Shown in pieces: positions 7,398 to 48,805 of a stretch of DNA of 64,000 nt (positions within the stretch are counted from its first letter, which is position 1; the number at the start of each line of letters is the position of its first letter). Origin of the DNA: Podarcis pityusensis. Its lineage: Eukaryota. The notes under the pieces were generated by a model. It was not told the DNA's origin and did not search any database. It saw only the letters and a program-made list of their open reading frames with translations. The translations under genes and the position numbers were made by a program. The DNA is taken from assembly GCA_964106645.2 (NCBI GenBank), contig OZ067041.1; one strand, given 5' to 3'.

Positions 7398-7762
7398 TAT
7401 TCTACCTTGTAACCCATGTCCAGTGTAACTAACACGCACACACCATTTGCAGGTAATTTTTCTTAGGAATAGCATTTCTCAGAAGACACTGTGCATCGAG
7501 AATGAGTTTCCTTAATGCCTGTCATCCTCTACAGCAGAAAGAAGCATCACTGACACAAGATAGAAACCAAATTCTTACTCTGATCTACTAAATTTCATCT
7601 TGTTAAGAATACTAAAACTCTTCAGTTGACAGTTACTGAAAATAAACTATTGTACCACATCTTGAAAAAAATCTACTGTGACTGTAGCAGAGGCTACATC
7701 TAACACAGTTATGGCTGACAGACTAGAAAGTTGCTTTTATATTGTTATACTGCAACAGGGTT

Positions 7763-7953
7763 TCACAGGGAACATTTTGAACTTCGTGACAGTGGAGGTG
7801 GTTTAGCTGACACTTTGCTTTGGACTGCAGATGAGGCCTTTTTATGGTCAAATCTCAGGCTGCGAATTGTGCTGTTTATAGCTGCAACACATGCTTTCCA
7901 GTCATATCCAGTTTCCTTCAGCTCAAAAGATGGGTAAGTCTCTTGCAGAAAGT
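7763..7953 (-). CDS. BEND2: BEND2 last coding exon (BEN domain 2 C-terminal half, stop TGA)
   Basis: DFLQETYPSFELKETGYDWKACVAAINSTIRSLRFD...KCSL*. Confidence 0.88.
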
Positions 7954-10613
7954 CTAATAATAAAAAAAGCAAGTTACAAATTGTTTATTAAAGTTTTATA
8001 TTGCTTAGTAAGTATTGAGTTGTACACTGTTCAGATTAGGCAAATTAAAGGCATCCTACTTTGAAGAGAGAATGCTACAGTACCCGTAACTGCTTCTGAC
8101 AAGCAACTACTAAATCAGGAATCCTACAAATGAGCAGTAAATGCCTTTTGGAAGAGCCTCATCAATATGATTGCTCCTCTGGTGCTGAGGAGCCCTGGTA
8201 TCCTAGGCAGCAGCGTGTGATGAAACAGGATGGAAGATGGTGGCACAGAACTCGCTCCAAAGCTGACTGAGCAGATTAGGGTGCATAATCGGACCTACCG
8301 TGCAGCAATAAGGGCAGCAAAGAAGTCCTACTTCACAGCCTCTAGTAATGATCCAGCAGAGCTCTTACAGACCACCTGGAATCTGGTCTCATGTGTAGGT
8401 GGGGACGGGCATTTGGAGGCCTCCTTTGACCATTTGGTCCATTATTTTGAAGATAAAGTCACTTGACACTGCAGCAATTTCGATGCTGCCATTATTGTAA
8501 CAATTCCACCTTGATCACTGAAATCTCTTGATGGGGCACTTCTGGTAGGTTGGCCTGAGATTTGGTTGGCCTATGCAGTAAAGACCAAACACTGAAACTG
8601 GCAAGCCCTGCTGTGGAACGCCCTACAAGTAGAGTTTTGGCAGGAAGCTACTCTGCCTCCTTTTAGACATATTCTGAAAGAGGTCTTGTTTAGACAGAAC
8701 TCCACAATATGAATTTCTTTTTCACCAACCAGTATCTCCTGATGTTTTATTAATGTTTTAAATCTTATGAATACATTTGCTGATTTTATTATATTTTGTA
8801 TACCACCCTGATATATCTTGTTAAAGAATAGTTTATAAATATTTGAATAAATATTTCACAGCCTGACAGCTCAGTCCTATATAATGTCTGCTCGGAACCA
8901 AATTGCACTGAGTTCCATGGGGGTTACTCTCCCGTTAAATTGCCTTTAGGGATTGCATCTCTCCTACTGAAACCGTTACTGACCTCTAAGAGCATTTATT
9001 TTGTTGCAGTCCAGTGGATGTGTGCCACGGTCCAGGTTGCCATACACATTGCTTTTTATCAGGATATTCTCTGTGAACAGATGACGTATCAGGTAGCGTG
9101 CTGAAAGTTCTGGCCGAGTTTTTCCCTTGGCTGCAAAAATAACTGAAAAGGGCAACTGGACATTCCTTGATGGGTTCCCAAGGTGTGCTAGAGAGGAGGC
9201 ATTTTTATTATTATTATTATGAAAAAGATTTCAAACCCTGTTCTTTAAGCAGAATGGCTCAAGAATGGTTGACAAATGTCAGCCCTAAGATTGTCAGTCT
9301 GAAAGCAGAGACCATCTAAAAAGCTTAGAAATCTAACTATCCTGTTTTGTTCTAAGTGGAATGGTTTCATGTTTGTTTTCAAAACTGATTAAAAATGAAG
9401 AGTTCTGTCTCTACATTGAGCAGATTCCTCCTAATTCTATATTTCTGAAATGCCTAAAGTAGGTAACTAAAACAAACCCATGTCTGCATGCTCAGTCTAA
9501 ACTGAAGCAGGGGAAAAATGAAGGACGATTTATCAGTCCGACTGCTAAAAGTCTAATTTAACTTGTGAGCTACCCAGCTAGGTATAACCCACCAGCCACT
9601 ATGCTCTGCAAGCTGCTTGATCGCCCCACCCCCATTCTTTCCCTCTTAGACAGACAAGGGGGGAAATGCAGGTTTTTAAATGCCTGGAGGACTGGTTTAC
9701 AGTGTTTGCATACTGCATATGGCTTGCACAGTTCTGACAAAGAAAACAAAGGTTCAGCAGCTTACCCATTGGCTCTAAAGAAGGTGGTTCACTGGAAGAA
9801 GGTGCATTTTTATTATTATCCCCTGTTGAATTCTGAAGCTGGTTTGATATTGAACTGGTTTGAGAATTGATGTCACTCTCTTCCCCAATATCAATTAAAT
9901 CTACACACATGGATGTGTCTGGAGCTTCAGGAGCTTTCTCTTTTCCCTCAGTGATCTAGGAAGCAATGTAGCAGGGAGGAATATTTCCATAACTAATGTA
10001 AAAATGCAGTAATAAACTTTTACAAATATCATAAGGAAGAAACTTAAATGAATTAAAGCAAGAACAATATTGTCTATTATTTTATTTCATAGTATTTTCA
10101 ATTGAGTAAGCTACGTTATTTTTGCTCTTGGCAATAGCAGTGACACAGTAGCAAAAGAGGTAGGCATTCTTCTGTAAATTCTCTATTCAATTTGAAACAT
10201 TCGAAGCAATGGCCGTGAATCACTACTTCAGTAACTAGAGATCTATAAATATTTTGTATCAATGAGCCTGAAACATCCTTAATACTTTCTGGGTTTCAGC
10301 GTTTATTATTAACTTCTGATTTCAAACTTAAAATAATTGCTTTCAGAGAAATGCAGTCTGGGCTAGGATGTGTTTATAGAGGCGTCAACACTAAGAAAGA
10401 ACTTACTGGACTTGTTTTGCTTTCATAACGTAAGCAGCGGATCATTGCATTCACATTTGTAATACAGGTTTTCCAGTCTTTCCCACGCTCACTTAGATCA
10501 TAACTTGGGAAATAAGCAGCAAGAAATTCTGCATTCAAAAACACAATTATTATTTTTAAAAGCACACTTATGTTACTATGAAACACCACGCTTCTGTTTT
10601 AAACAAACCATTG

Positions 10614-10666
<53 letters not shown>

Positions 10667-13600
10667 CCCGCCCATCTGGCTGGGCTTCCCCAAGCTACTT
10701 TGGGTGGCTTCCAACAAAATACTAAAATACAGTAATCCATCAAACATTAAAAGCTTCCCTAAACAGGGCTGCCTTCAGATGTCTTCTAAAAGTCTGGTAG
10801 TAGTTGCTCTCCTTGAAATCTGGTGGGAGGGCGTTCCACAGGGTGGGTGCCACTACCAAGAAGGCCCTCTGCCTGATTCCCTGTAACTTGGCTTCTCGCA
10901 GTGAAGGAACTGCCAGAAGGCCCTCGGCGCTGGATCTCAGTGTCCAGGCAGAACGATGGGGGTGGAGATGCTCCTTCAAGTATACTGGAGCGAGGCCGTT
11001 TAGGGCTTTAAAGGTCCACACCAACATTTGAATTGTGCTCGGAAACGTACTGGGAGCCAATGTAGGTCTTTCAAGACTGGTGTTATGTGGTCTCGGTGGC
11101 CGCTCCCAGTCACCAGTCTAGCTGCCGCATTCTGGATTAGTTGTAGTTTCCGGGTCACCTTCAAAGGTAGCCCCACGTAGAGCGCATTGCAGTAGTCCAA
11201 GCGAAAGCAAACCAGAGCATGCACCACTCTGGCGAGACAGTCCGCGGGCAGATAGGGTCTCAGCCTGCGTACCAGATGGAGCTGGTAAACAGCTGCCCTG
11301 GACACAGAATTGACCTGTGGCTCCAGGGACAGCTGCGAATCCAAAATGACGCCCAGGCTGCACACCTAGACCTTCAGGGGCACAGTTACCCCATTTAGGA
11401 CCAGGAAGTCATCCACACCAGCCCGCCTCCTGTCCCCCCAAAAGAGTACTTCTGTCTTGTCAGGATTTAACCTCAATCTGTTAGCTGCCATCCATCCTCC
11501 AACTGCCTCCAGACACTCACACAGGACTTTCACCACCTTCACTGGTTCTGATTTGAAAGAGAGGTAGAGCTGGGTATCATCCGCATATTGATGGACACCG
11601 AGTCCAAACCCCATGATGATCTCTCCCAGCGGCTGCATGTAGATGTTGAAAAGCATGGGGGAGAAGACAGAACCCTGAGGCACCCCACAAGTGAGAGCCC
11701 ATGAGAGTATCCATTTTGAGAGCTTGTGTAAATTGAAATATTTATGAAAATAAATACTGATTACCTGATTATAACCAGACAAAGGCGACTAGGTAGTAAA
11801 ATATGTTAAGAATATTTCATAAAGCAAAGAAAACCATATTTCATCTGAACTGAATTAAGTGCATGTATACCATCAGGCAAATTTGTTTGCTCCAGTTGCA
11901 ATAGGAACTGCCGTTTTTGTGTATGAATGTATGAAAACATGCAGTTTTTTGATACTTGCAAGTATAATCATACTTGCAAGTTAAAGGCAACATTAGGGAA
12001 AGAATGTCTGCAGAGGAGAAAAAGTGCCCAGCGAGGGTGGAGTTTAAACCTTCTCCTATTCACTATTCTCCCCCTTTCCATTGTCTCCTAGCCATATTTC
12101 TTTCTGTTGTTCTAGGCAGCTGGGGGGAAAGGAGAAAACCACTTGAGAGAGAAGGAATTGTGGATGAGAACTGGGAGGGAAATGATTAAGCACTTTTCTT
12201 CTTGGCTATTTCCTACCTACTGTTCTACTCTATCTAAATATTGGAAGAAAACATAAAACTGGAAACCCTGTCTGAGTCTTATTATATAGTTCTGGCCTAA
12301 GGAACTACCAAGGGTTGAAAATCTAACCCCTTCTCTTAAACCAGTGAGACATCAGACGGCGGTGAGCGTCCTGGGGGGCGCCGCTCCCGGCGATGTCACC
12401 CCCCTCAGGGGTGACACCCAGGGCGGACTGCCCCCACCTTGCTCCGCTACTGCGTGACATACCTCTGATTGCAGCGACCTTGTTTGGGTCTAGCGTCCTG
12501 CGTCCTCGAGCCCTTGTACCCATAACACTGCATAGCAATGTTTCTTTTGGGAACAAAACCCGGACCAAGTAGCGTGCAGCATACTTTGGCACGGTCTTTT
12601 GCCACGCTTTCATCAAATAGTTGCCAAGGACCTTCACATTCCGCTTTGGATCACCAATGAACTCTAGATAAAGGAAAATATTAGAAGAGTATTAAAACAA
12701 AATTGCACTGCACCCACTGCAAGTCCTCCAAAGTGCCATTCTGGGCTTCTAACATTTCACAGACATGGCCCACGTGTTTGGAAGCCCCCCCCCCCCCCCC
12801 GTTCAGTAAAGACACAATTCTTCTAACCTCTTAACCATGATTGAGAAACTGGGAATGGGCCACAGACTCCTTACCCCTTCTCCTGCAGCACATGAACTTC
12901 CCCATCCCTGCTCTTTTCACAAATAACAGTAGTGCAGTATTATTTCTACCCAGATAGTAATGCTAACCATCCTTGCAAAGTCTGGTTGCAAACTTCAGTG
13001 AGCTGTAGGGAAAGTCTCCTAAATATTCAGTCAAAAGAATAACACTCAATAAAAAAAGAAAAGGAAAAGGATGCAACACAGAAGCACCTTTTAAAACAGT
13101 GCCAGGCTGAGTGATGGACAGGGAAATGGTTGGAGGATAGTGGCTGCTATGAAAATACAACCTGCCATTATGCCCTTGTGACGCCTCCACCAAAGGGCAG
13201 GTACAATAGGGATGCCTTTTGCCTTTATGGAGCAGGAAGTGAGAAAGCAGAACATTGGTGCTATGAGAAACAGTGGGTGGCTACCTTTTCAGTTTAATGG
13301 AAGAATCCCTGTTCATGCAAAAGAGTGGAATTAAAGAAGGAATTAAGAGCTAAACACATTATTCTTATGAAAACTGTAACTCACCAAAATTATGACTCAT
13401 AGAAGAAGAAGAGGGTACCTCGTTACTAATATCTGTACCACCGGTTGAAGTTCTGTAAGTTACCAGCGTTTTTTTCCTCTCCAAACTGGTTTCAGATAAT
13501 ATCACTGGTGAGGGTACAGCTGAAGATTCTACCTGAGCTGGACTATCAGTAGTTGAAAGACTAGCTTGTGAAGGAAGGTCGGGCATCTTATTAGCTGTAA

Positions 13601-16600
13601 CTGGAGCATTCAATAAACGACTAGAGGCAACTGCTGAACTGGCAGAAACAGAAGATGACGAGGGTGGCTCATTACGAATACTTCTACTTCCAGGTGAAGT
13701 TTTGTTAGTCACTGTCCTATTGTTTCTCTCTAAATTAGCTGCCGGTGGTGTAGATGCTACTGATGACACCACTGGTGAGGCTATTGCCAAAGATGCGACA
13801 GAAACAGAGCTTTTGTTGACTAAGGTTGCTAGATTGGTTTGTGAAGGAATATTAGGCATGTCACTAGCCATGTTGAATGGGAGACATAGTGAACGGGTGG
13901 AAACAATTGTAGGAAGTGGTGGACTCTGCCTGTGCACAGGGGGCTGTGATTCAGGTTGAAGGGTGTGTGGAACTGGCTTAACCGCAGATCTGGTCAAAAT
14001 AGGAGCTCTTTGTAGCTTAACCTTCATGGGTTGGCTCTGACATCCATGCCCAGGGGGTAAGATCTGACTTGGCTTTCTTTCTGTTGCCTTCTGGATTCTG
14101 ATTTTTCCAGGCAAGAGATTTCTAGGACTTCTGTACGTAAACCTAAGTGGTCTCTGAAAAGGAGAGAAAAACATTGAGCAAACACTCCATTTTGCCACAC
14201 TGCTTGGCATTAGCCCCATTTGAAAAAGTGGAGATTATCAGGTGAGCACATACTGGAGGCAGGAGTACTCAAATGCTATGCTTTGAACGGAACTGAATTT
14301 ATATGTTCAGATTTGTTTTGCATCATGTTTTGTTAGCCATCTTAATCATAGTCTACAGTGGTACCTCGGGTTAAGTACTTTATTCATTCCGGAGGTCCGT
14401 ACTTAACCTGAAACTGTTCTTTAGCTAATGGGGCCTCCTGCTGCTGCCGTGCCGCCGGAGCACGATTTCTGTTCTCATTCTGAAGCAAAGTTCTTAACCT
14501 GAAGCACTATTTCTGGGTTAGCAGAGTCTGTAACCTGAAGCGTATGTAACCCGAGGTACCACTGTATTTGTAGCTCAAGCTATATAAAGTTATTTCAGCA
14601 ACTTTGAAAAAAGTTATACAATATAGGCTAGCCTTTTGTATGCAAACATTAGGTTTATGTTTTTGTGCAATGTTTTCTTATTACTATATACACAATCTTG
14701 CATTGTAATAGAAACCAAACTTGGGCCCTGTTAGGTGTACTGTGCTATCCCAAGCTGTACACAGTTATGTGCCTCTGGTACAGGGTTAGGGATGCACAGG
14801 ATGTTAGGATATTTCCGTTCCACCTTAAAAAGGACAGGCTGTTGTGAGTCACAGCCTGCGTACTTCCGGCTCACAGTAAGTTTCTGTTTTTGTATATAGT
14901 TTTTGTTTCTCTCTGTTGCCTTGACATGCAGTCAGGCAGTCATGTTCTTCCTTTGTTCTGACCAACGCTGAATAAAGCTGTAAATATGCTGCTCTCCTGA
15001 GTGCATCTTTCGTTGTGCGAACTCTGTGAAAAGGGCGTGCATGAGTCCTGGGATGTGGACAGCTATTTCCGAGGCTCGTGTCGCTAATTGACTGATACTG
15101 TATCTACGGGAGATTGATGGATCGTCCTGAGACGACGTGGAGTCATGATGGCCTTTGTCTCCCTAGCAGTATCCCAACACAGGGATGGGGGACCTGTGCC
15201 CTAGAGATACTGTTAGACTACAGCTCCAATCACTCCTGACCACTGGCTATGCTAGCCCATCCCTGCTCTAGTGCATGGCCAGATTAGAAGCTTAATGCCA
15301 TTTTTAAATCACAATGAAACACAATAAGAAAGACACCATTAAAGACAATTAGAAAATTAACAAAACATCAACAAAAACGAATTGCAACTACAGCAATTTA
15401 ATACTCACTGGTTTTAAAAGTAAAGGCTTTAACTGGGTGTGTTGCATTTCTGAGACCTTGCGATGAAGGCTCTCAAACTTCTCATCCAGTTTCAGAATGG
15501 CATCATACATGGCCTGCAAACATACATTTATTTATGTCAGATTGGAAGAGAGATTCAAAGCCAGCTGGAACTCAAGGGAGAAAACCAAGAAACTGGTGCC
15601 TAAACAGACCTTGTTTTGGAAGAACTTATAAAAGCAAGGATGGAGAACCATTAGTTGCTGGACTTGAACTCCTGTCTATCCCAGCCAATGGTGAGGGTGT
15701 AATGACATTTGGAGGGCCACACATTCCCTATCCATGACAAATGGCTTCTCAAACAAACAATGAAGGACGGCACAGTACCTGACAATAATTAAGGACTTCC
15801 ATAAGAGTTTTCTGCTGATCTCCTGCACATGAAGCTTCAGATACAACACTCCCCTAGTGTAAAGACAATGAAAATGTAACCCAGTCACAGGAATAATTGG
15901 AAACAAAAATGATAAAATAAAGCTCTCAAATTTAAAAGAAAGCAGTATTTTAATTTGCGCAGTTCCTCCTACAGAGAGGCTATAAATTATTTTTGGAAGT
16001 ATACATACACATTCATCATCAGGGTCGTATTCATAAATAACATCTCCATCTTCATATTCAGGCTCTTTGGCTCTCATCTAATAAAGATATTGAAATAAAG
16101 AATATAAATAACATAAATTATAACTGATATGGCACTTATAATCATTTGTTATTATTGTTCCGTGGGCTGACTAAGAAAAATTATTTTAATCCATACTAAG
16201 TTTTGTTAAGAAAAGCAGAACGCTGGTGCCACGCTGTGGATAAGAAATTCATTACATGGAAACGATCAATGTGCTCCACAGATACCGCTAATAGTTCATA
16301 GAAAGACAGTAAGCAGGGCTTATAGAAACAGTTTGAATTGTTATATTTTTGTGTCAGTTATTCGATAAAAGTTTATACAGTCATACCTCGGGTTACAGAC
16401 ACTTCAGGTTGCGTTTTTTTCGGGTTACAGACCGCTGAAACCCGGAAGTACTGGAACGGGTTACTTCCGGGGTTTGGAGGTCGTGCATGTGCAGAAGCGC
16501 CAAATCGCAATGCTCGCATGCGCAGACGTGCCACTGCGGGTTGCGAATGTGCATCCTGCACGGATCACGTTCGCAACCTGAGCGTCCACTGTATTTTAAT

Positions 16601-19600
16601 GCTGGGATAAGCTGATTTCAGTCTTTTGCAGTCTACTTAAAAAACAACCCCTAAAACCCTAGAATCTCTGTGACCCAAATTAAGTTATTAATCTGAGGTA
16701 CCACTGTACAAGTAATTTATTGGAATATACTTACCCCCGTTAAAGAGGATGCAAGTCGGCGCCTTTTACGTAAATAAACTAATTCCATTTGTTCTGGATT
16801 GCGACTGAGCCTTGGCGCACTTGTTGAAAGATTTTCCTGTGATCCAGCTTGCTCCTCTATATCCAATAAATCTTCATTACCTTCTAAAAATGTAAGTTAG
16901 GCAGTGTCTTAATAATGCCTTAGATACCACTCAAGAAAGATTTAATTTAGTTTTATACCTCACTATCCCAATTAATTAGTCTTCTCACAGAATGCTACAT
17001 TAAAAAAGTATTTCCAGAAAATTTGATTCACTGTGGGTAAGATTTCAAATCTGGCACTGGAAGGGTAGAAATCTGGAGGTCACAAGTTTTGGCTTGGCTA
17101 CAGTACCAAGGCCAGACAAAAATTATGCTTCCCTAGATAACATCGCTGAACCCCCCTATATGAAAAGTCATAATCATCTTTCAAAATGAAATTAAACATA
17201 ATTACCATATGTAAGATGAGTTACATAGCGACCATCACACTTCCCTTGAGTTTTAGGTCCATTTTCTGTATCTTCCATTTCTGAATCATCAATTATTACA
17301 GTGTTGTCATCATCTTCAGTGTGCACTGCAATATAGCCTAAAACATGTACACAGCAGGGGAGATGAATTAGATGCTATTAAGTACAGTAGTTTACACTTC
17401 TCTGTATAAGCCCAACAGCCCAATGTATCTACAATAAAAGCCTTTTATTGAACCATATAGTAGATTTTTTGTCTACTTTGCTTTATAATTTAAAATAACG
17501 TAAATAAAGCAGCCTTCTCTCCCCCCCCCCCCGCCCATTCAAGTTAATGGAAGAATTCGGTTGACTTGTACTACAATCACAAACCTCCACTTTCCACATG
17601 GAAAGTGAAGGTCTAGAGAAAATGGCTTTCAAATTAAGCACAGCTGCACGTTGATAAGTACTGCTCCTCCCAAGCAGTTATGACCATCCAGTCACCGAGA
17701 ATAAAACTTCATTCCCACAGATTAATTCTTATTCACCCAAGGTTAAAGAATAAAGATGAGGTGGGGCAGGGGGGAAGTGTAGTGAACCTGTTTAGCAGGT
17801 TTGAAGAGACTCGCAGTTATAATAGCAATAATAGCGTGCAGCTGATTCATATGGAAACGCACAGTAAAAGAACAATGCAATAAGTTCATCTTAAAAGTAG
17901 CCTGAAATATCACAAAATAAAGGGGCAGAAGTTAGGAGCATGCAATGTGTGCATCACACAAAACCAAGAATCAGCACTGTACTGTCCTTGGTGGAGGGAA
18001 TGCTGGATTGTGGATTGGACTCAGGTCTTGCATCACTCATTTACTTCCTTATTAATTGTTTGGGGTACATTTCACTTTGTACCTATTAGAGCTGCGCTTG
18101 CTTCACTTTTCCCTTGTCTCCCTTTTTATTTTAGGAGGGAGGCTTTGGGCAAAAAAACAAAAACAAGACTTTCCAGTGGTTATATTGGAAAGGATGATGT
18201 GTTCATTTGACTTTTAGATTATGCAAAGCACATGCATAGGCTTGCCCAATTACGCTCCTAATTGTCTCCTGAGTAGATTCCCCCCACTCTCACCAATCTA
18301 TTGAGCAAAGCACAGAATCCTAGTTTGACCTGGATACATAAAATAGGAGTTAATGAAATGTCTTATTGGATGCTAAGACTTACAGTACCCTATCATTAGG
18401 TATGAAGCACTTAAATTTTACCACAAGAATAAGTGTACCTCTTTTAAGGACACAAAACCCAAGGATCAATGACAGCCAAAGAAAAAGACATCAGAACAAA
18501 GATGACAGCTGTACCATTCAATATGGCTCCATTCAATGCTTTTGCGGGGGAAACCCCCTTTTTTAAAGGGAAAAATGTGTGTACTAAACACCCACCCACA
18601 CCCCGACACTTTATTTTTTCTGCTGCAAAGCAGGTCCATGCAGCTGCCTTGTTTCTGGTGTTAGAATGACAATACATGGCCTAATACTTCCTCATTTTTT
18701 AAAATGTGATCACAGTAACCACTATGTTTTAACTTTTGTGTTCAACATGGGTGTGAGACAATTTCTTGGTATGAACTCCCACCACTGGCTCTTTGGGATA
18801 CTGTCTGGATTTCCTCATTTTATCTTATTTGTTTAAATAATTGTTTGAAATAACAGTTTGGAAATGAAAGGGAAAAAATTAAGCACCTTTGGATGGAATA
18901 ATTTCACCTTTCCATTCTTGTTTTCAAAGACACCTTACAAAGTTATAGGAAAATTAAGCACACCACAAAGGTATAATTTCTACAACTCTCAGGAAGCTGC
19001 TGTTCTGAGCACAGGACTGGTTTTAGGTTTGATGTGGCCCTAAGCTACTGAAGGTAACGGGCCCTTTATATGTCCAGCTGTCCTTTGTCAACAGCAGCTG
19101 TTTTTTTGTGTTGAATATATGCTATATGGTAATTTATGGACCTAATAGGTATCTAAAGCCATTTGCACATAACAGGAGCCTACACAACACAAAACACTGT
19201 TGCTGTGTGTAGATTTTATTTTGTTTTTTATCTTATATTTTGGATATGTACATCCAGATTTTTTTCCCCTTTAAATTTTTTTGGGGCCCCCAAAAGAGTG
19301 GGGCCCTAAGCTATAGCTCGTTTAGCTTATACGTAAATCCGGCACTGTCTGCGCAGTCAGAACGGCCCTTTTACTCTCAGCTTTAAAGTTTAGATGGACG
19401 ACTGCGCTGCCATTGTACACACAACTGAGCGATGCTCATTTCTGAGGAAACACACGTAAGACCGCTCAGGGTGGCTGCAGTCTTGTGCCCCATCGAGCAC
19501 AGAGGGACACGGACCTGCGTCTCCCCGCTCCCTCCGCACGAGAACGGCTTCCTCGAGCCACCTGCCGTGCAAACGGCTTCCCGGTGTTCAACGGCAACGC

Positions 19601-20076
19601 ACGCGCACGCGCAGTGGCGAGGGAAGCATTTTCGTACATGCTCGGTTCCTTCGCGTAACACAGCTACAGAAGGTGGGCGCCCGCGTCCTCCCCACACTCC
19701 GCGCTCACCAAGGTAGCGAGATTTCATTATCCCCTCAGTTCAATAAGGTTTTATTCGCCCGCCAAAGAAATCTCAAGCCTGGCCTCGTTTTCCCCGCCCG
19801 TTAATCTCAAGCAGTCTTGGTTACCCCCCCCCCCCGCACACGAGTCGACGTAACGCTGACAGACAAGCGCGCTGCGCAATAGCAGCGCCGCTGAGCACGA
19901 AGCGGGCCAATAAGAGCTCAACACGGAGGTGGCACCTCGCGAACGGCTCGGCTGCTTGAGCAACGGCCGTTTGCGCGTCCAGCCGTTGGAAACGTTCCTT
20001 GTTTGCGCATGCGGGCAGGCGGCGGGTGGGCTCCCGGCTCCCTGTCCGTTTCTAGCTTCTTACCTTTGGCAGACAT
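7763..20076 (-). CDS. BEND2: BEN domain-containing protein 2, complete 12-exon gene, about 730 aa; join(20076-20064,17337-17233,16883-16735,16077-16009,15853-15779,15513-15409,14153-13385,12663-12463,10528-10407,9955-9766,9187-8984,7953-7763)
   Basis: Exon lengths 13+105+149+69+75+105+769+201+122+190+204+191=2193 nt (731 codons including the stop); all introns GT-AG with matching phases. The two BEN domains (FIGDPKRNVKV...LDPNKVAAIREFL...DWKTCITNVNAMIRCL and HLGNPSRNVQLP...LSARYLIRHLF...SNVYGNL...NKINALRDFLQETYP...DWKACVAAINSTIRSLR) match recalled human BEND2. NHS and BEND2 are also linked in mammals. Confidence 0.88.
8150..8850 (+). mobile_element. Old degraded L2/CR1-clade LINE fragments
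   Basis: ORF 8230..8466 (YRAAIRAAKKSYF) resembles LINE ORF2; followed by a degenerate L2-like 3' end (ctgtggaacgccct...). Confidence 0.45.
8984..9187 (-). CDS. BEND2: BEND2 exon 11 (BEN domain 2, N-terminal half)
   Basis: AHLGNPSRNVQLPFSVIFAAKGKTRPELSARYLIRHLFTENILIKSNVYGNLDRGTHPLDCNKINALR; not in the ORF track, read by hand; AG/GT sites, 204 nt. Confidence 0.92.
9766..9955 (-). CDS. BEND2: BEND2 exon 10 (inter-BEN linker)
   Basis: ITEGKEKAPEAPDTSMCVDL...SLEPM; ttcctag acceptor, ATGG|gtaagc donor, phase 0 to 1. Confidence 0.8.
10407..10528 (-). CDS. BEND2: BEND2 exon 9 (BEN domain 1, C-terminal half)
   Basis: EFLAAYFPSYDLSERGKDWKTCITNVNAMIRCLRYESKTSP; CCA|gtaagt donor. Confidence 0.92.
10614..11701 (-). 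mobile_element. 5'-truncated L2-clade LINE (reverse transcriptase C-terminal part plus (TTA)n tail), disrupted
   Basis: GVPQGS, QYADDTQLY, LRLNPDKTE, RLDYCNALY and HITPVLKDLHWLPV motifs; in-frame TAG at 11366-11368 and a frameshift near 11030; lies in BEND2 intron 8. Confidence 0.92.
12463..12663 (-). CDS. BEND2: BEND2 exon 8 (BEN domain 1, N-terminal half)
   Basis: EFIGDPKRNVKVLGNYLMKAWQKTVPKYAARYLVRVLFPKE...LDPNKVAAIR; AG/GT sites, 201 nt. Confidence 0.92.
13385..14153 (-). CDS. BEND2: BEND2 exon 7 (Ser/Pro/Thr-rich disordered region)
   Basis: Within ORF 13365..14219; ttttctctccttttcag acceptor, TTTG|gtgagt donor, 769 nt, phase 0 to 1. Confidence 0.85.
14356..14564. mobile_element. Tigger-like MITE
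   Basis: CAGTGGTACCTCGGGTTA TIRs, TA TSD; same family as the copies at 20797, 53866 and 59763. Confidence 0.88.
14802..15179 (+). mobile_element. Solo LTR (Gypsy-like, 378 bp) in BEND2 intron 6
   Basis: TGTTAGGATA...TATCCCAACA termini, cagga/caggg 5-bp TSD (4 of 5), internal AATAAA 14971-14976. Confidence 0.7.
15409..15513 (-). CDS. BEND2: BEND2 exon 6 (AMYDAILKLDEKFESLHRKVSEMQHTQLKPLLLKP, coiled-coil-like)
   Basis: tttgcag acceptor, CCA|gtgagt donor, 105 nt, phase 0-0. Confidence 0.8.
15779..15853 (-). CDS. BEND2: BEND2 exon 5 (GSVVSEASCAGDQQKTLMEVLNYCQ)
   Basis: tttacactag acceptor, CAG|gtactg donor, 75 nt, phase 0-0. Confidence 0.75.
16009..16077 (-). CDS. BEND2: BEND2 exon 4 (MRAKEPEYEDGDVIYEYDPDDEC)
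   Basis: ctttattag acceptor, TGT|gtatgt donor, 69 nt, phase 0-0. Confidence 0.7.
16378..16591. mobile_element. Tigger-like MITE with GCGCATGCGC-rich core
   Basis: TA-CAGTCATACCTCGGGTT...CCACTG-TA; related copy at 63874. Confidence 0.8.
16735..16883 (-). CDS. BEND2: BEND2 exon 3 (EGNEDLL...YLRKRRRLASSLTG, basic NLS-like motif)
   Basis: ctaac branch point plus tttttag acceptor (NAGNAG), GGG|gtaagt donor, 149-nt open frame, phase 1 to 0. Confidence 0.75.
17233..17337 (-). CDS. BEND2: BEND2 exon 2 (GYIAVHTEDDDNTVIIDDSEMEDTENGPKTQGKCD)
   Basis: ttttag acceptor; acidic N-terminus as in mammalian BEND2. The donor GATG|gtcgct is weak but is the only phase-1 option found. Confidence 0.65.
19012..19347. 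mobile_element. hAT-type MITE
   Basis: CAG...CTG ends (caggactggtttta / taaatccggcactg), 8-bp TSD tctgagca/tctgcgca. Confidence 0.7.
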
Positions 20077-20480
20077 GGTGCCGAAAGAGAGGAGGAGGGA
20101 GGGGAGCCGCGGACGGTCGCGACGCGGCGAGGCCCAGCGACGGAACAGACCCGGAGTCGGGACGCGGAAGCGGCTGCAGCGACGTGAGGCACAAAACAGT
20201 TTCGGTTACCCTTGCGGCTGCGCAGTGGGGACTTGGGCGCGTCTGGCAAACGGGCGGCCGAGGGAGGGCGCGCTGAGGTGGTGGCTTCGCCTGTCCCTTA
20301 CAGCGTTTGCGGGAAACGGCCTTGAGAGAGCGCCCTTCCCTCCGTCGCCTCTCCCACCCCACGAGATTTCAGGATGTGGTGACGGCAAGCACACGCTCAA
20401 CAGGCTCTGTTTTCTGCGGCACATGCAGCCGTCGCTGGCAGCGCCACTATTCCCTCGCTGCTCACTTGGTTCGGTTGTGA
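19350..20480. promoter_or_regulatory. CpG island / BEND2 promoter and first intron
   Basis: The only long GC- and CpG-dense non-repeat block; contains BEND2 exon 1, CCAAT 19907-19911, NRF1-type TGCGCATGCG 20004-20013, E2F-type sites at 19759-19766 and 20309-20316, and MYB-type YAACGG sites. Confidence 0.88.
20064..20076 (-). CDS. BEND2: BEND2 exon 1 coding part (MSAK/G)
   Basis: Minus strand reads ggcaccATGTCTGCCAAAG|gtaaga: good Kozak context, consensus donor, phase 1 matching exon 2; lies inside the CpG island. Confidence 0.8.
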
Positions 20481-20796
20481 GGGGATGGCAGAGGGATTCA
20501 AGGAATGAAAGAAACCAGTACCTTGATTATAAGAGTTGTAGGTGAATGGGCTCGCCAAGTTGCTTGCCTATAAGCAAATACTTACAGAGCACGAAGTGTT
20601 CTCTCACTGTTTTCAGATGTTGTAGTAGACATTATCTTAGGAGAGGCTTCCCTGAGTTAGGAAATGGGCCTTTTTTAAGCTAGTGCTTGCAGCCTGCAAT
20701 TTTCATAAGTACTTACATTCAAAATGATAAAATAAGATCCCTTGGGGCGGGTGTGTGTGTTGTGAGTTCTTCTCAAGTATCCACCTTCCCATAGTA

Positions 20797-21971: not shown

Positions 21972-22377
21972 GCCTATAGTTTAGGTGGCTTTAAAAGGGG
22001 ATTAGACAAATCCTTGGAGGAGTCTGCTGCAATCATGTTCTCATGTACTTGGCGGTAAATCCCACTGAACTCAATGGACGGAGCTTCCTTCTGAGCAGAC
22101 ATACAGAGGATTGCACTATATGACTTATCGTTGGCGATAGATCAGGAGAGCTATCGTCTACTTCCGGGTTTAGAAGAGGCATAGATTTGAAGCACAATCT
22201 GGTAAGGAGCAACTGTAAGGAACGACCGTTGCTTTCATGCCCCTGTTTGTGAGCTTCCCAGAGACATTTGGTTGGCTGTGGTAGGAAAGGGGATGTTGGA
22301 TCAGGCAGACCTTTGGCAGACCTCTTGCATTGATTGCAGTGAAGCGAAGAGAATGGAGCAGTTTAATTGCAGTCACG

Positions 22378-25300
22378 TTTATTTGCCATTTCTATACACA
22401 CTTCCTAGATAATCAAACTTTTCTGACACATTTTAGAGAGGGGGTTCACAATGAAACTGTCACTGTTTTTACTAAAAATAAATACAAGACTTAAAGTGTT
22501 GCACAGCTCTAAAATATACAAAGGCTTGGATTTAATGTAAACTTTGAAAACATTTTACAAAAGAAACCATCTTTGCAACAATTTAAAAAGTTCATATTTA
22601 CAAATATTACAAAAATACAAAATGGATGCAAGTCCATAAACCATTGTCTCTTCTGCCAGCATGAACTGGTGATAGTACCAAAATAGTTACACTGTAACCT
22701 TCTTAATTGGTTTTTTTTTTTAAACTTTTAAGTCATAACCTACAGTATTTCTCTAAATCTGCCACAATTGCAGCAAATGCACTCTATCAGTGACCTTTGG
22801 CAAATGCAAACATATGCTTTATTTGCTTCAGCTAATCCATATTCTCTATGCTGCCACAATATTAAAATAGGAAAGAAAAAATGTTATTGAAAGAAAAGAT
22901 CAAACAAACAGCTGCATAACTTCAAAAACCATTCTTGTAACATCAGTGCAAACAACATAATTGAAAGTTGGAATGATGGCTCACAAATTACTTATGTGTT
23001 TATACCCTGTTTCAAGATGGGATGTGTTTTGAGGGCTCTGACGACACTACTTGTGAGCACAGTCCTATGCATGTTTACTTGCAAGTAAGTCCCACTGCAT
23101 TCAATGAGGCATGCTCTCAGGAAACTGTGCATAAGATTGTCGATTTGGGTTGTTTTTATCTCCAAATTTTATCACCCTGGTCTAGAGATCTATGCACTCA
23201 TACACAGGCAAGGAGCTATTGCTGGTTATTCCCATTAACGTCAATGAAAGGGCATCACTGTGTGCATAAAGTTATGCCCCATCCTCAGTTCTAACGGGAG
23301 CAACCCTTGTGGGCAGCAGAGCTCCATTTGCCAACCATCTATTGCTGAATCAGGGGTTGTTTGCTAATATATATATTTTAAAGTGGATTTACAATCCATA
23401 TTCATTTGGGCTTTTAATCTGATAAACAGAAAATAGAAACACTTTGTCATAGATTTCTGAGTAAACAAAATAAGTTTTTTATATGATAGTTTTGTGAGCA
23501 TTACATAAGAAGGTGTTTCACTGCCTTCTAATTCAAGTTGCATGTATTTTTTTTAAATATATCTCTCTATATTTATATAGCTCTCTGTGGTATCAATACG
23601 AAATCATTAAATGCCTTGGAGTGTTATCCACAATGGAGGCGTTCGCCAGCCTCAGTGCACTGTGGATGGCACCTGCAAGACTGACATCTTGGAGAAACCA
23701 ATTCAGCTGTTTTCTATAACAGTTTTGCTATAAAACACATTAGCATTTTTTAAACAAATGAATTTGGCACTTGGATCCTAAACATGTGGTGGTGATATTT
23801 CTGCCTGTGACACTGAAGCAATGCCATTGGTGATGCTCCATTGTTAGCACCAAGAGTTGAGACTCAGTTGTCTTAGCATCAGGAGTTTGTAAGGGTACTC
23901 TGGCAGTAATTGAAAAGTGGCCTCAAATGGCACTTGTGCCTCCCATATCAAATTTATTATATTGTTCTTTTCTTTTTTTTAAACTACATGAATCTTGTCA
24001 ACCCACTAATGCTTTCTACTTCACTTGCTATTTGACCACTTTTTAGAGCTTGCTTAGTAGCTCTATTAGACTGCAATCCTGAATACATTTCCTGGGAGTA
24101 AGTCCCATTTAACTTTATGGGACTTACTTCTGAGACAACATGCATAGGATTGCACCATTAGACTTGCTTGTAATACTAACTAACACCTCTCTATTACACA
24201 TCCCTACCAAACATTTAGGTTAGGTTTTGCTTATAGCAGTCCAGATCCTAAATGTCTGCCCCAGCATATCTACCTACTCCGCCTCCATAACATCTCTGCA
24301 GTGTGCCAGAATGTTGTCATAGTTAGTGACAACATACTGGCTCAGAAGTGCAGATGGCCCATCCTAAATCTTTATTTGCCAGCATGGCAAATTTTAGAAT
24401 TGGACCAGTGATTTCCTGTTCTCACTAGTCTTTTTACACACATGCTTACCATTCATCTTTTGCCACACTGGAGGACTATAAGAAAACCTAAAAAAAGAAA
24501 ACCTTGTATATTTTTCACGAGCCCCTGATGAAGATGAACTTCAACAATTTGTGACTAATTTTGAATGTTATTATTTGCTCGATCATTTCAACTACAAACA
24601 ATATATTTAAGCTTATCCTTATGAGCAAACTAAAAAGTAATCCTCCCTCTGCTTTCCACCCCTTCTAAATTCCTAGTAAAACTTATTTCTGCTTGAAGCC
24701 AACTTATTTGTAGACTTACTAGTGACTATCAACTTAATTCTGCCATTTGATTCAATCTGTCCTGCACAACACATTCCTCCTTAAAACTGCCCTCAGCACT
24801 AAACCTTCCTGCATTTGTATTCCACAGTTAATATCAATGGACTGCATTTTAGAAAACTGGGCCTGAATGTCTATTTGATTTTGGAGTCTATTGCAATGGG
24901 GAAACTGATGCATCTATGGAAAATATTCTATTCTAAAATTAGTGACATTGTTTTGTGCATATGAGTGTGTGTTTTTTAAAACCCCTGTTGTACTTGATCT
25001 CATATCAATTTGTTTTTGCTCCTAGTTTTCCGACAAGAAAATTCAAGTAACTTCAAGTAATCCAGCTTTTGTTTCCCTGCCTTCATTTATTCAAAGTATT
25101 TGCTTGGATTCCTTTTCTACCCCACCCACTACATATTCCCACCCTGTTAAGCATTTCTGGTAAAGCCAGGACCAAAAGAAACTGAGCTGTATGTGGCTGG
25201 CATAATAGACCAAAGAGCTTCCCCATTCCAAGTTTAGTAAGCTATATGTAAGTTTAGTAAGTATGCATACATACACCTATTTCTCAGCTATTTTTTTTCA

Positions 25301-26907: not shown

Positions 26908-48805
<21,898 letters not shown>

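What the first reader, a model, noticed from the sequence alone, without database searches (positions are those of the whole stretch)
14030..16077. Lizard BEND2 carries the N-terminus of mammalian SCML1: likely unsplit ancestor of a BEND2/SCML2 chimeric gene
Seen in sequence: spliced exons 4-7 encode MRAKEPEYEDGDVIYEYDPDDEC|GSVVSEASCAGDQQKTLMEVLNYCQ|AMYDAILKLDEKFESLHRKVSEMQHTQLKPLLLKP|RPLRFTYRSPRNLLPGKIRIQK, upstream of two BEN domains. Recalled, not verified: human SCML1 begins ...IKTRIPTYDEDDNTILYAYE...[49 protein letters not shown]...RYGYK...KLKLQK and ends in an SCML2-like SAM domain. The VS(E/D)ASC, Q.KT...VL..CQ..YDA...LD.K.....RKVS and K...QK residues line up colinearly, and I recall no such block in human BEND2. 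Inference: SCML1, usually described as an SCML2 duplicate, is a chimera of the BEND2 5' exons and the SCML2 SAM exons. The ancestral amniote protein (coiled coil + 2 BEN domains) would then have been partitioned between two X-linked, testis-expressed mammalian genes. I do not know whether this has been published.
Basis: partly seen in the sequence, partly recalled or inferred. Interest (0 to 1): 0.9.

Follow-up and report, generated by a model that had tools for sequence, protein, structure and literature searches.

The report
SCML1 arose from BEND2's front half
The lizard BEND2 gene shows that SCML1, a testis gene of placental mammals usually called a copy of SCML2, is really a hybrid that took its position and first five coding exons from BEND2 and only its tail domain from an SCML2-type gene.

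Summary
Confirmed. Exons 4-7 lie on the minus strand as stated and are spliced to the BEN exons in RNA. They encode a five-heptad coiled-coil block found in BEND2 from sharks to marsupials. An exhaustive profile search found the block only in non-eutherian BEND2 and in SAM-bearing proteins named SCML1 from all four placental superorders (best E 2e-19), never in SCML2. In hippo, SCML1 matches BEND2 exons 3-7 exon for exon (phases 0,0,0,0,1), its ATG lies inside a frameshifted exon 3, and it sits just downstream of NHS on the same strand, where lizard and bird BEND2 sit. So SCML1 is a chimera of BEND2 5' exons and Scm-type SAM exons, most likely made on the placental stem. Loss of the block from placental BEND2 is supported only indirectly: I could not obtain a full placental BEND2. 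Not wholly new: an 'SCML1 domain' in BEN proteins was noted in 2008 (cited in PMC8887127; original not readable here), and NCBI names some truncated bird BEND2 models SCML1. I found no paper with the exon-level, synteny-based origin. A first-stage note on this same window proposed an inversion; the scan had not found this on other DNA.

The parts
20064..20076 (-). BEND2 coding exon 1 (MSAK, phase-1 donor) in a CpG island
   Evidence: CpG o/e 0.95-1.21 at 19500-20500; Lacerta BEND2 begins MSAKG; not covered by the RNA laid
17206..17337 (-). exon 2, acidic
   Evidence: RNA contig in X7
16735..16883 (-). exon 3, ends in a basic RKRRR stretch; homologous to the first coding exon of hippo SCML1, where the 5' part is out of frame and a new ATG is used
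16009..16077 (-). exon 4 (23 aa, acidic YEYDPD motif) = hippo SCML1 coding exon 2 (27 aa)
15779..15853 (-). exon 5 (25 aa, start of the coiled coil) = hippo SCML1 coding exon 3 (26 aa)
15409..15513 (-). exon 6 (35 aa, rest of the coiled coil) = hippo SCML1 coding exon 4 (35 aa, 105 nt in both)
15436..15823 (-). predicted 41-residue helix, five heptads, across exons 5-6 (intron included in the range)
   Evidence: AlphaFold2 helix 35-75 on the platypus block, pLDDT above 90 in its core; a/d positions 99-100% hydrophobic in BEND2 and SCML1
13385..14153 (-). exon 7 (256 aa, Ser/Pro-rich): 5' part homologous to hippo SCML1 coding exon 5; 3' end homologous to tandem mini-exons in camel BEND2
12463..12663 (-). 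exon 8, first half of BEN domain 1
10407..10528 (-). exon 9, second half of BEN domain 1
   Evidence: homology; not covered by the RNA laid
9766..9955 (-). exon 10, linker
8984..9187 (-). exon 11, first half of BEN domain 2
7763..7953 (-). exon 12, second half of BEN domain 2 and stop
26908..27594 (-). last coding stretch of NHS, upstream neighbour on the same strand, 6.8 kb before the BEND2 ATG (context, marks the locus)
   Evidence: 71% identical to the hippo NHS exon 9.2 kb upstream of SCML1; collinear conserved non-coding blocks behind the NHS stop in lizard, hummingbird and hippo

Best explanation
The window holds an ordinary, intact lizard BEND2: acidic N-terminus, a basic stretch, a five-heptad coiled coil (exons 5-6), a Ser/Pro-rich linker and two BEN DNA-binding domains. 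It probably works as an oligomeric DNA-binding chromatin factor, the coiled coil clustering BEN domains as in BANP (inferred). On the placental stem the locus was rearranged with duplication. The copy left beside NHS kept exons 3 to about the first half of 7, started translation at a new ATG in exon 3 and was joined to two Scm-type SAM exons: this is SCML1 (coiled coil + SAM). The BEN-bearing copy, now beside SCML2, lost or erased the coiled-coil exons and amplified the 3' end of exon 7: this is placental BEND2. The simplest single event is an inversion with staggered, duplicating ends, one end in BEND2 and one in the 3' part of SCML2. Shown: homology, exon match, position, distribution. Inferred: loss in placental BEND2, SCML2 as SAM donor, the inversion, oligomer function.
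For: Block only in non-eutherian BEND2 and eutherian SCML1; 25 BEN-type and 16 SAM-type hits, none with both, the other 21 fragments. Hippo SCML1 exons of 10|27|26|35|210 aa with phases 0,0,0,0,1 against devil BEND2 exon 3 end|24|25|35|173 aa with the same phases. Hippo first coding exon (151 nt) aligns end to end to devil exon 3 (152 nt), score 116 against a null maximum of 94.5 in 500 windows. NHS directly upstream on the same strand in lizard, hummingbird and hippo. SCML1 with the block in Xenarthra, Afrotheria, Laurasiatheria and Euarchontoglires; platypus and four marsupials have block + BEN. Hippo SAM is closest to Drosophila Scm in PDB, E 9e-18; SCML1 and SCML2 share C-terminal exon structure and have a 'totally different N terminus' (PMC2459175). 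No BEN-type hit is of the camel type, and a block still 40% identical to the marsupial one would be found 99% of the time. Camel BEND2 has two related mini-exons like the 3' end of exon 7.
Against: No full-length placental BEND2 and no SCML2 sequence could be fetched, so loss of the block and the SAM donor were not compared directly. The camel locus covers only 10 kb upstream of BEN1. The protein tree of the block does not place SCML1 with mammals: it pairs the long SCML1 branch with shark, though SCML1 + mammals is not rejected (p-AU 0.25). DNA identity of hippo SCML1 exons favours devil only slightly (0.615 against 0.602 bird and 0.592 lizard). NHS was not seen within 10 kb of the devil gene model. 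RAI2 and SCML2 order and strand in non-eutherians were not seen.
Confidence: 0.7

Rival explanations
1. Pure fission: one inversion broke BEND2 inside exon 7 with no duplication of its 5' exons; the 5' half became SCML1, the 3' half got new 5' exons (close to first-stage note s1-722538).
For: Hippo SCML1 matches only the first 80-130 aa of exon 7 and its exon 3' end shows no likeness to the exon 7 end (score 20.5, 461 of 500 null windows as high), while camel BEND2 keeps that 3' end.
Against: SCML2 keeps its SAM exons, so at least that end was duplicated. From memory only (not tested): human BEND2 still has exon 2-like, exon 3-like and mid-exon 7-like sequence, which would mean both genes share BEND2 5' sequence.
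Confidence: 0.1
2. Several steps: a whole BEND2 copy moved next to SCML2; later a copy of the SCML2 SAM exons was inserted into the original gene beside NHS, whose BEN exons decayed. Same chimera, no single inversion.
For: Fits all sequence and position data here.
Against: Needs more events. No BEN remnant was found in the 10 kb behind hippo SCML1, which is uninformative after about 100 million years.
Confidence: 0.12
3. Placental BEND2 still has exons 4-6 but diverged beyond detection; SCML1 is a chimera but nothing was partitioned.
For: Human and mouse BEND2 are only 34% identical (PMC9132480); detection falls to 55% at 30% identity.
Against: Camel BEN exons are still 64-67% identical to devil; fast-evolving SCML1 is found in at least 16 clusters; the mouse N-terminal half is described as disordered (PMC9132480).
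Confidence: 0.05
4. SCML1 is an old paralogue (coiled coil + SAM) lost everywhere except placentals.
For: Best tree groups SCML1 with shark.
Against: Long-branch pairing; needs many losses; SCML1 occupies the BEND2 position beside NHS and keeps a non-coding remnant of exon 3 at about 60% DNA identity to devil, lizard and bird.
Confidence: 0.02
5. Chance likeness between two coiled coils.
For: Heptad patterns can give spurious scores.
Against: No unrelated coiled coil among the 62 hits in 1.84 billion proteins; likeness extends to non-helical exons, intron positions, DNA and gene position.
Confidence: 0.01

Closest known systems
BEND2 (non-eutherian; zebrafish-type zgc:113423)
   Same: Same gene: twelve coding exons, block + two BEN domains, 91-98% identical per exon to Lacerta agilis BEND2 for exons 4-12.
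   Different: Nothing of substance; exon 7 is longer in lizards through an internal repeat.
SCML1 (placental mammals)
   Same: Exons 3-7 homologous with the same phases; same coiled coil; same place behind NHS.
   Different: SCML1 ends in an Scm-type SAM domain and has no BEN domain; starts at a new ATG in exon 3.
Placental BEND2
   Same: Two BEN domains with the same four exons (camel); 3' end of exon 7.
   Different: Block not detected in any placental BEND2 representative; tandem mini-exons before BEN1; lies beside Scml2 in mouse (PMC9132480 Fig. 1A legend).
'SCML1 domain' of Abhiman, Iyer and Aravind 2008
   Same: Names an SCML1 domain among the partners of BEN domains (as cited in PMC8887127, written 'SCLM1').
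   Different: The original could not be read here. As cited it is a domain-architecture remark, without exons, gene position or date.
BANP (coiled coil + BEN)
   Same: N-terminal coiled coil on a BEN protein; in BANP it mediates oligomers needed for DNA selectivity (PMC11472053).
   Different: No sequence hit between the block and BANP: analogous layout, not shown homologous.
Chimeric genes made by duplication or inversion (e.g. Drosophila cases, PMC5460883, PMC1463047, seen as abstracts only)
   Same: 5' exons of one gene joined to 3' exons of a neighbour.
   Different: Here old (placental stem), kept in all four superorders, and apparently with reciprocal domain loss in the parent gene.

Membership tests
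BEND2 | two C-terminal BEN domains | tested here: met
BEND2 | best matches are annotated BEND2 across all exons | tested here: met
BEND2 | block exons and BEN exons on one transcript | tested here: met
   joints; single chicken ORF
SCML1 (window gene as a member) | C-terminal SAM domain | tested here: not met
   gene ends in BEN2; no SAM in Lacerta BEND2
SCML1 (window gene as a member) | SCML1 N-terminal block | tested here: met
SCML1 (window gene as a member) | position directly behind NHS on the same strand | tested here: met
chimeric gene (SCML1) | 5' exons homologous to one parent with kept intron positions | tested here: met
chimeric gene (SCML1) | 3' exons homologous to a second parent (SCML2) | tested here: inconclusive
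   SAM is Scm-type; no SCML2 sequence compared; rests on PMC2459175
chimeric gene (SCML1) | second parent lacks the 5' block | tested here: met
   no SCML2, SCMH1 or MBT-type protein among 62 hits; PMC2459175
chimeric gene (SCML1) | outgroups lack the chimera and keep the parent | tested here: met
   platypus and marsupials have block + BEN; all named block + SAM proteins are placental
domain partition between BEND2 and SCML1 | placental BEND2 lacks the block | tested here: inconclusive
   negative exhaustive search with 99% power at 40% identity; no full gene seen
coiled-coil oligomerisation domain | long helix with hydrophobic a/d heptads | tested here: met
coiled-coil oligomerisation domain | forms oligomers | not testable with these tools
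   monomer prediction only
duplicating inversion | RAI2 flipped relative to NHS between non-placentals and placentals | not testable with these tools
   10 kb flanks reached no RAI2 or SCML2

The most novel reading that the evidence does not exclude
One duplicating inversion on the placental stem made SCML1 and freed BEND2 to lose its coiled coil, so that an ancestral oligomerising DNA-binding protein was split into a coiled-coil + SAM scaffold (the meiotic dense-body protein) and a coiled-coil-less BEN factor, both germ-line expressed; this exon-level history is unpublished.
Probability: 0.45. Interest if true: 0.7.

Novelty: new variant of a known kind. Interest (0 to 1): 0.55.

Why it matters
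It explains the N-terminus of SCML1, which the one evolutionary study found here left as 'totally different' from SCML2, and corrects two habits: calling SCML1 an SCML2 duplicate with no chicken counterpart, and treating non-placental BEND2 as the plain equivalent of human BEND2 (by position and 5' exons it is as much the SCML1 counterpart). It defines a conserved, Pfam-less coiled-coil domain that can be tested: whether coiled coil plus SAM builds the meiotic dense body, and whether placental BEND2, which lost it, depends on partners for oligomerisation, a question that also bears on tumour fusions that put a foreign N-terminus on the BEN domains (inference). The lizard gene itself is ordinary.

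Tried and rejected
Pfam has no family for the block; PDB has no relative and no BEND2 BEN structure. ESM Atlas gave only weak leads under 0.9. Fold searches were not run: a single long helix matches anything. Attempts to get a full placental BEND2 failed: the third homologue search gave only a 205-aa camel model, its locus reached 10 kb upstream, an exact look-up of a camel ORF found nothing. Platypus and eel proteins had no locus on record; aardvark and wallaby loci came without DNA. The block tree was unresolved. Abhiman 2008 and Papanikos 2017 are not held. Paper searches for SCML1 with BEND2 (5 papers, none evolutionary by title or abstract), with 'BEN domain' (0) and with chimeric-gene or marsupial terms found no account of this origin. 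Alignment A1 held a stray row and was replaced by A2. Chance coiled-coil likeness and an old-paralogue origin were rejected as above.

Full report
Observation. They belong to a twelve-exon gene that starts in a CpG island at 20076 and ends at 7763, 6.8 kb behind the stop of NHS on the same strand. Exons 8-9 and 11-12 encode two BEN domains. Exons 4-12 are 91-98% identical to annotated Lacerta agilis BEND2, so this is a lacertid BEND2.

One transcript. In run X1 a single contig joins exons 3, 4, 5, 6 and 7; X4 and X7 show the 5-6 and 6-7 joints; the joint of exon 7 to the first BEN exon is present in all four runs and in 10 raw RNA reads of X23, whose first mates lie on the + strand as expected for a minus-strand RNA in a stranded library. 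The three contig runs are RNA by guess only and differ from the window at about 2% of exon 7 letters, so they come from another individual or a close species. No lizard contig spans exon 4 to exon 8, but a 2117-nt chicken contig carries block and both BEN domains in one ORF. The refutation 'exons 4-6 belong to a separate gene' fails.

Method note. Later searches used database proteins by id.

Distribution. Exon 7 alone retrieved bird proteins, two of which NCBI names SCML1 (tinamou, hoopoe) and others BEND2. The quail block retrieved block + BEN proteins from birds, alligator, turtles, lizards, caecilians, platypus and four marsupials. A profile of 16 such blocks, run against all 1.84 billion representatives, gave 62 hits: 25 with BEN, 16 with SAM, none with both, 21 fragments. 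The SAM-type hits carry Pfam SAM_1 and, where named, are all SCML1: hippo (E 2e-19), tiger, sheep, beaver, aardvark, rabbit, galago, lemur, marmoset, shrew, pocket mouse, tamandua and a bat. The BEN-type hits reach sharks, bichir, sturgeon, gar, bowfin, teleosts, lungfish and frogs; a partial gar model is again named SCML1. No SCML2, SCMH1 or other coiled-coil protein appears. Profile against profile gives 99.8% probability and 45% identity over 109 columns.

Exon-level match. Hippo SCML1 has coding exons of 10, 27, 26, 35 and 210 codons with phases 0, 0, 0, 0, 1, then two SAM exons; devil BEND2 has the end of exon 3, then 24, 25, 35 and 173 codons with the same phases, then BEN exons. The junction after the conserved CQ and the 105-nt exon are identical in both. 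Lizard exons 4, 5, 6 score z 5.2, 12.2, 9.8 against their hippo partners. Likeness runs 80-130 residues into exon 7 and then stops; the 3' end of the hippo exon is unlike the exon 7 end.

Position. Hippo SCML1 lies 9.2 kb behind the NHS stop on the same strand; that NHS exon is 71% identical to the one in the window, and the same non-coding blocks follow it in lizard, hummingbird (before BEND2) and hippo (before SCML1). SCML1 therefore occupies the ancestral BEND2 site. In mouse, Bend2 is drawn beside Scml2 (PMC9132480). The devil flank did not reach NHS.

Placental BEND2. Only a partial camel model was obtained. Its four BEN exons match devil at 64-67% for the two measured. Within 10 kb upstream there is no block, but two related mini-exons resemble the 3' end of exon 7 (scores 75.5 and 63.5 against a null maximum of 50; 132.5 to each other). 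None of the 25 BEN-type hits is closer to camel than to devil by more than a few points, and simulated blocks at 40% identity pass the cut-off 99 times in 100, at 30% 55 times. Loss is therefore likely but not seen directly; clustering could also hide some placental proteins.

What the block is. AlphaFold2 gives one 41-residue helix over exons 5-6 in platypus BEND2 and a helix over the same stretch in hippo SCML1. Five heptads have hydrophobic a and d positions in 99-100% of residues in both families, against 6-42% elsewhere. By analogy with BANP, whose N-terminal coiled coil drives oligomers (PMC11472053), it is probably an oligomerisation domain; this is inference. In SCML1, coiled coil plus SAM would give two self-association surfaces, fitting its reported place in the meiotic dense body (PMC9782464); also inference.

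Mechanism and date. The chimera is in all four placental superorders and the intact parent is in platypus and marsupials, so the placental stem is the simplest date. The block tree cannot confirm it: SCML1 is one long-branched clade drawn next to shark, and neither SCML1 + marsupials (p-AU 0.28), SCML1 + mammals (0.25) nor the opposite grouping (0.29) is rejected (no rows left out beyond the choice of 33 well-covered sequences). DNA identity leans slightly to devil. From my recollection of the human order (NHS and SCML1 on one strand; RAI2, BEND2, SCML2 on the other), one inversion with duplicated ends would give exactly this arrangement; it predicts RAI2 on the NHS strand in non-placentals, which I could not see. 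Pure fission and a multi-step route remain.

What is known. PMC2459175 calls SCML1 a recent duplicate with no chicken orthologue, sharing C-terminal exons with SCML2 but with a totally different N-terminus. PMC8887127 states that some BEN proteins contain 'SCLM1' domains, citing Abhiman et al. 2008, so the domain link is published; the original was not readable here. Automatic names already mix the two genes. Searches found no paper giving the exon-level origin, the position argument or the partition, but most subscription papers are outside the library.

Verdict. Real, well supported, and a new variant of a known kind (chimeric gene birth), partly anticipated at domain level.

Noticed in passing
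window 16735-16883, 16009-16016: Run X7 has a contig that skips exon 3 (joint 16077/17206) and shows an imperfect exon 4-5 joint; exon 3 skipping would shift the frame (phase 1 to phase 0) and leave the ATG at the first codon of exon 4 as a possible start, close to where SCML1 begins.
   Followed up: no
window 12664-13384: Intron 7, between exon 7 and the first BEN exon, is covered by lower-depth contigs in all three contig runs: possible intron retention giving a coiled-coil protein without BEN domains.
   Followed up: no
window 13385-14153: Lizard exon 7 has an internal direct repeat (72% over 85 nt, offset about 250-270 nt), making it 256 aa against about 175 aa in devil, platypus and bird.
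   Followed up: partly
window 17206-17337: Exon 2 is 10 codons shorter than in annotated Lacerta agilis BEND2.
   Followed up: no
L004:975-1120 and 7617-7755: Camel BEND2 has two related mini-exons like the 3' end of exon 7; the upstream one carries a stop and a frame break in this assembly.
   Followed up: partly
L005:10001-11332: The tamandua SCML1 hit is a compact copy with exons 3-5 fused and no NHS nearby: likely a retrocopy.
   Followed up: partly
window 22350-22880: A block of about 520 nt behind the NHS stop is 92.5% identical in hummingbird and 82% in hippo: strongly conserved non-coding sequence, probably NHS 3' UTR.
   Followed up: no
window 10740-11790; 14350-14570; 16370-16710: A broken LINE reverse-transcriptase fragment in intron 8 and very high-copy short repeats in introns 6 and 3.
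   Followed up: no
P0164, P0180, P0189 (gar, bowfin, tarpon): Divergent block + BEN proteins in non-teleost and basal teleost fishes, apparently a second paralogue beside zgc:113423.
   Followed up: no
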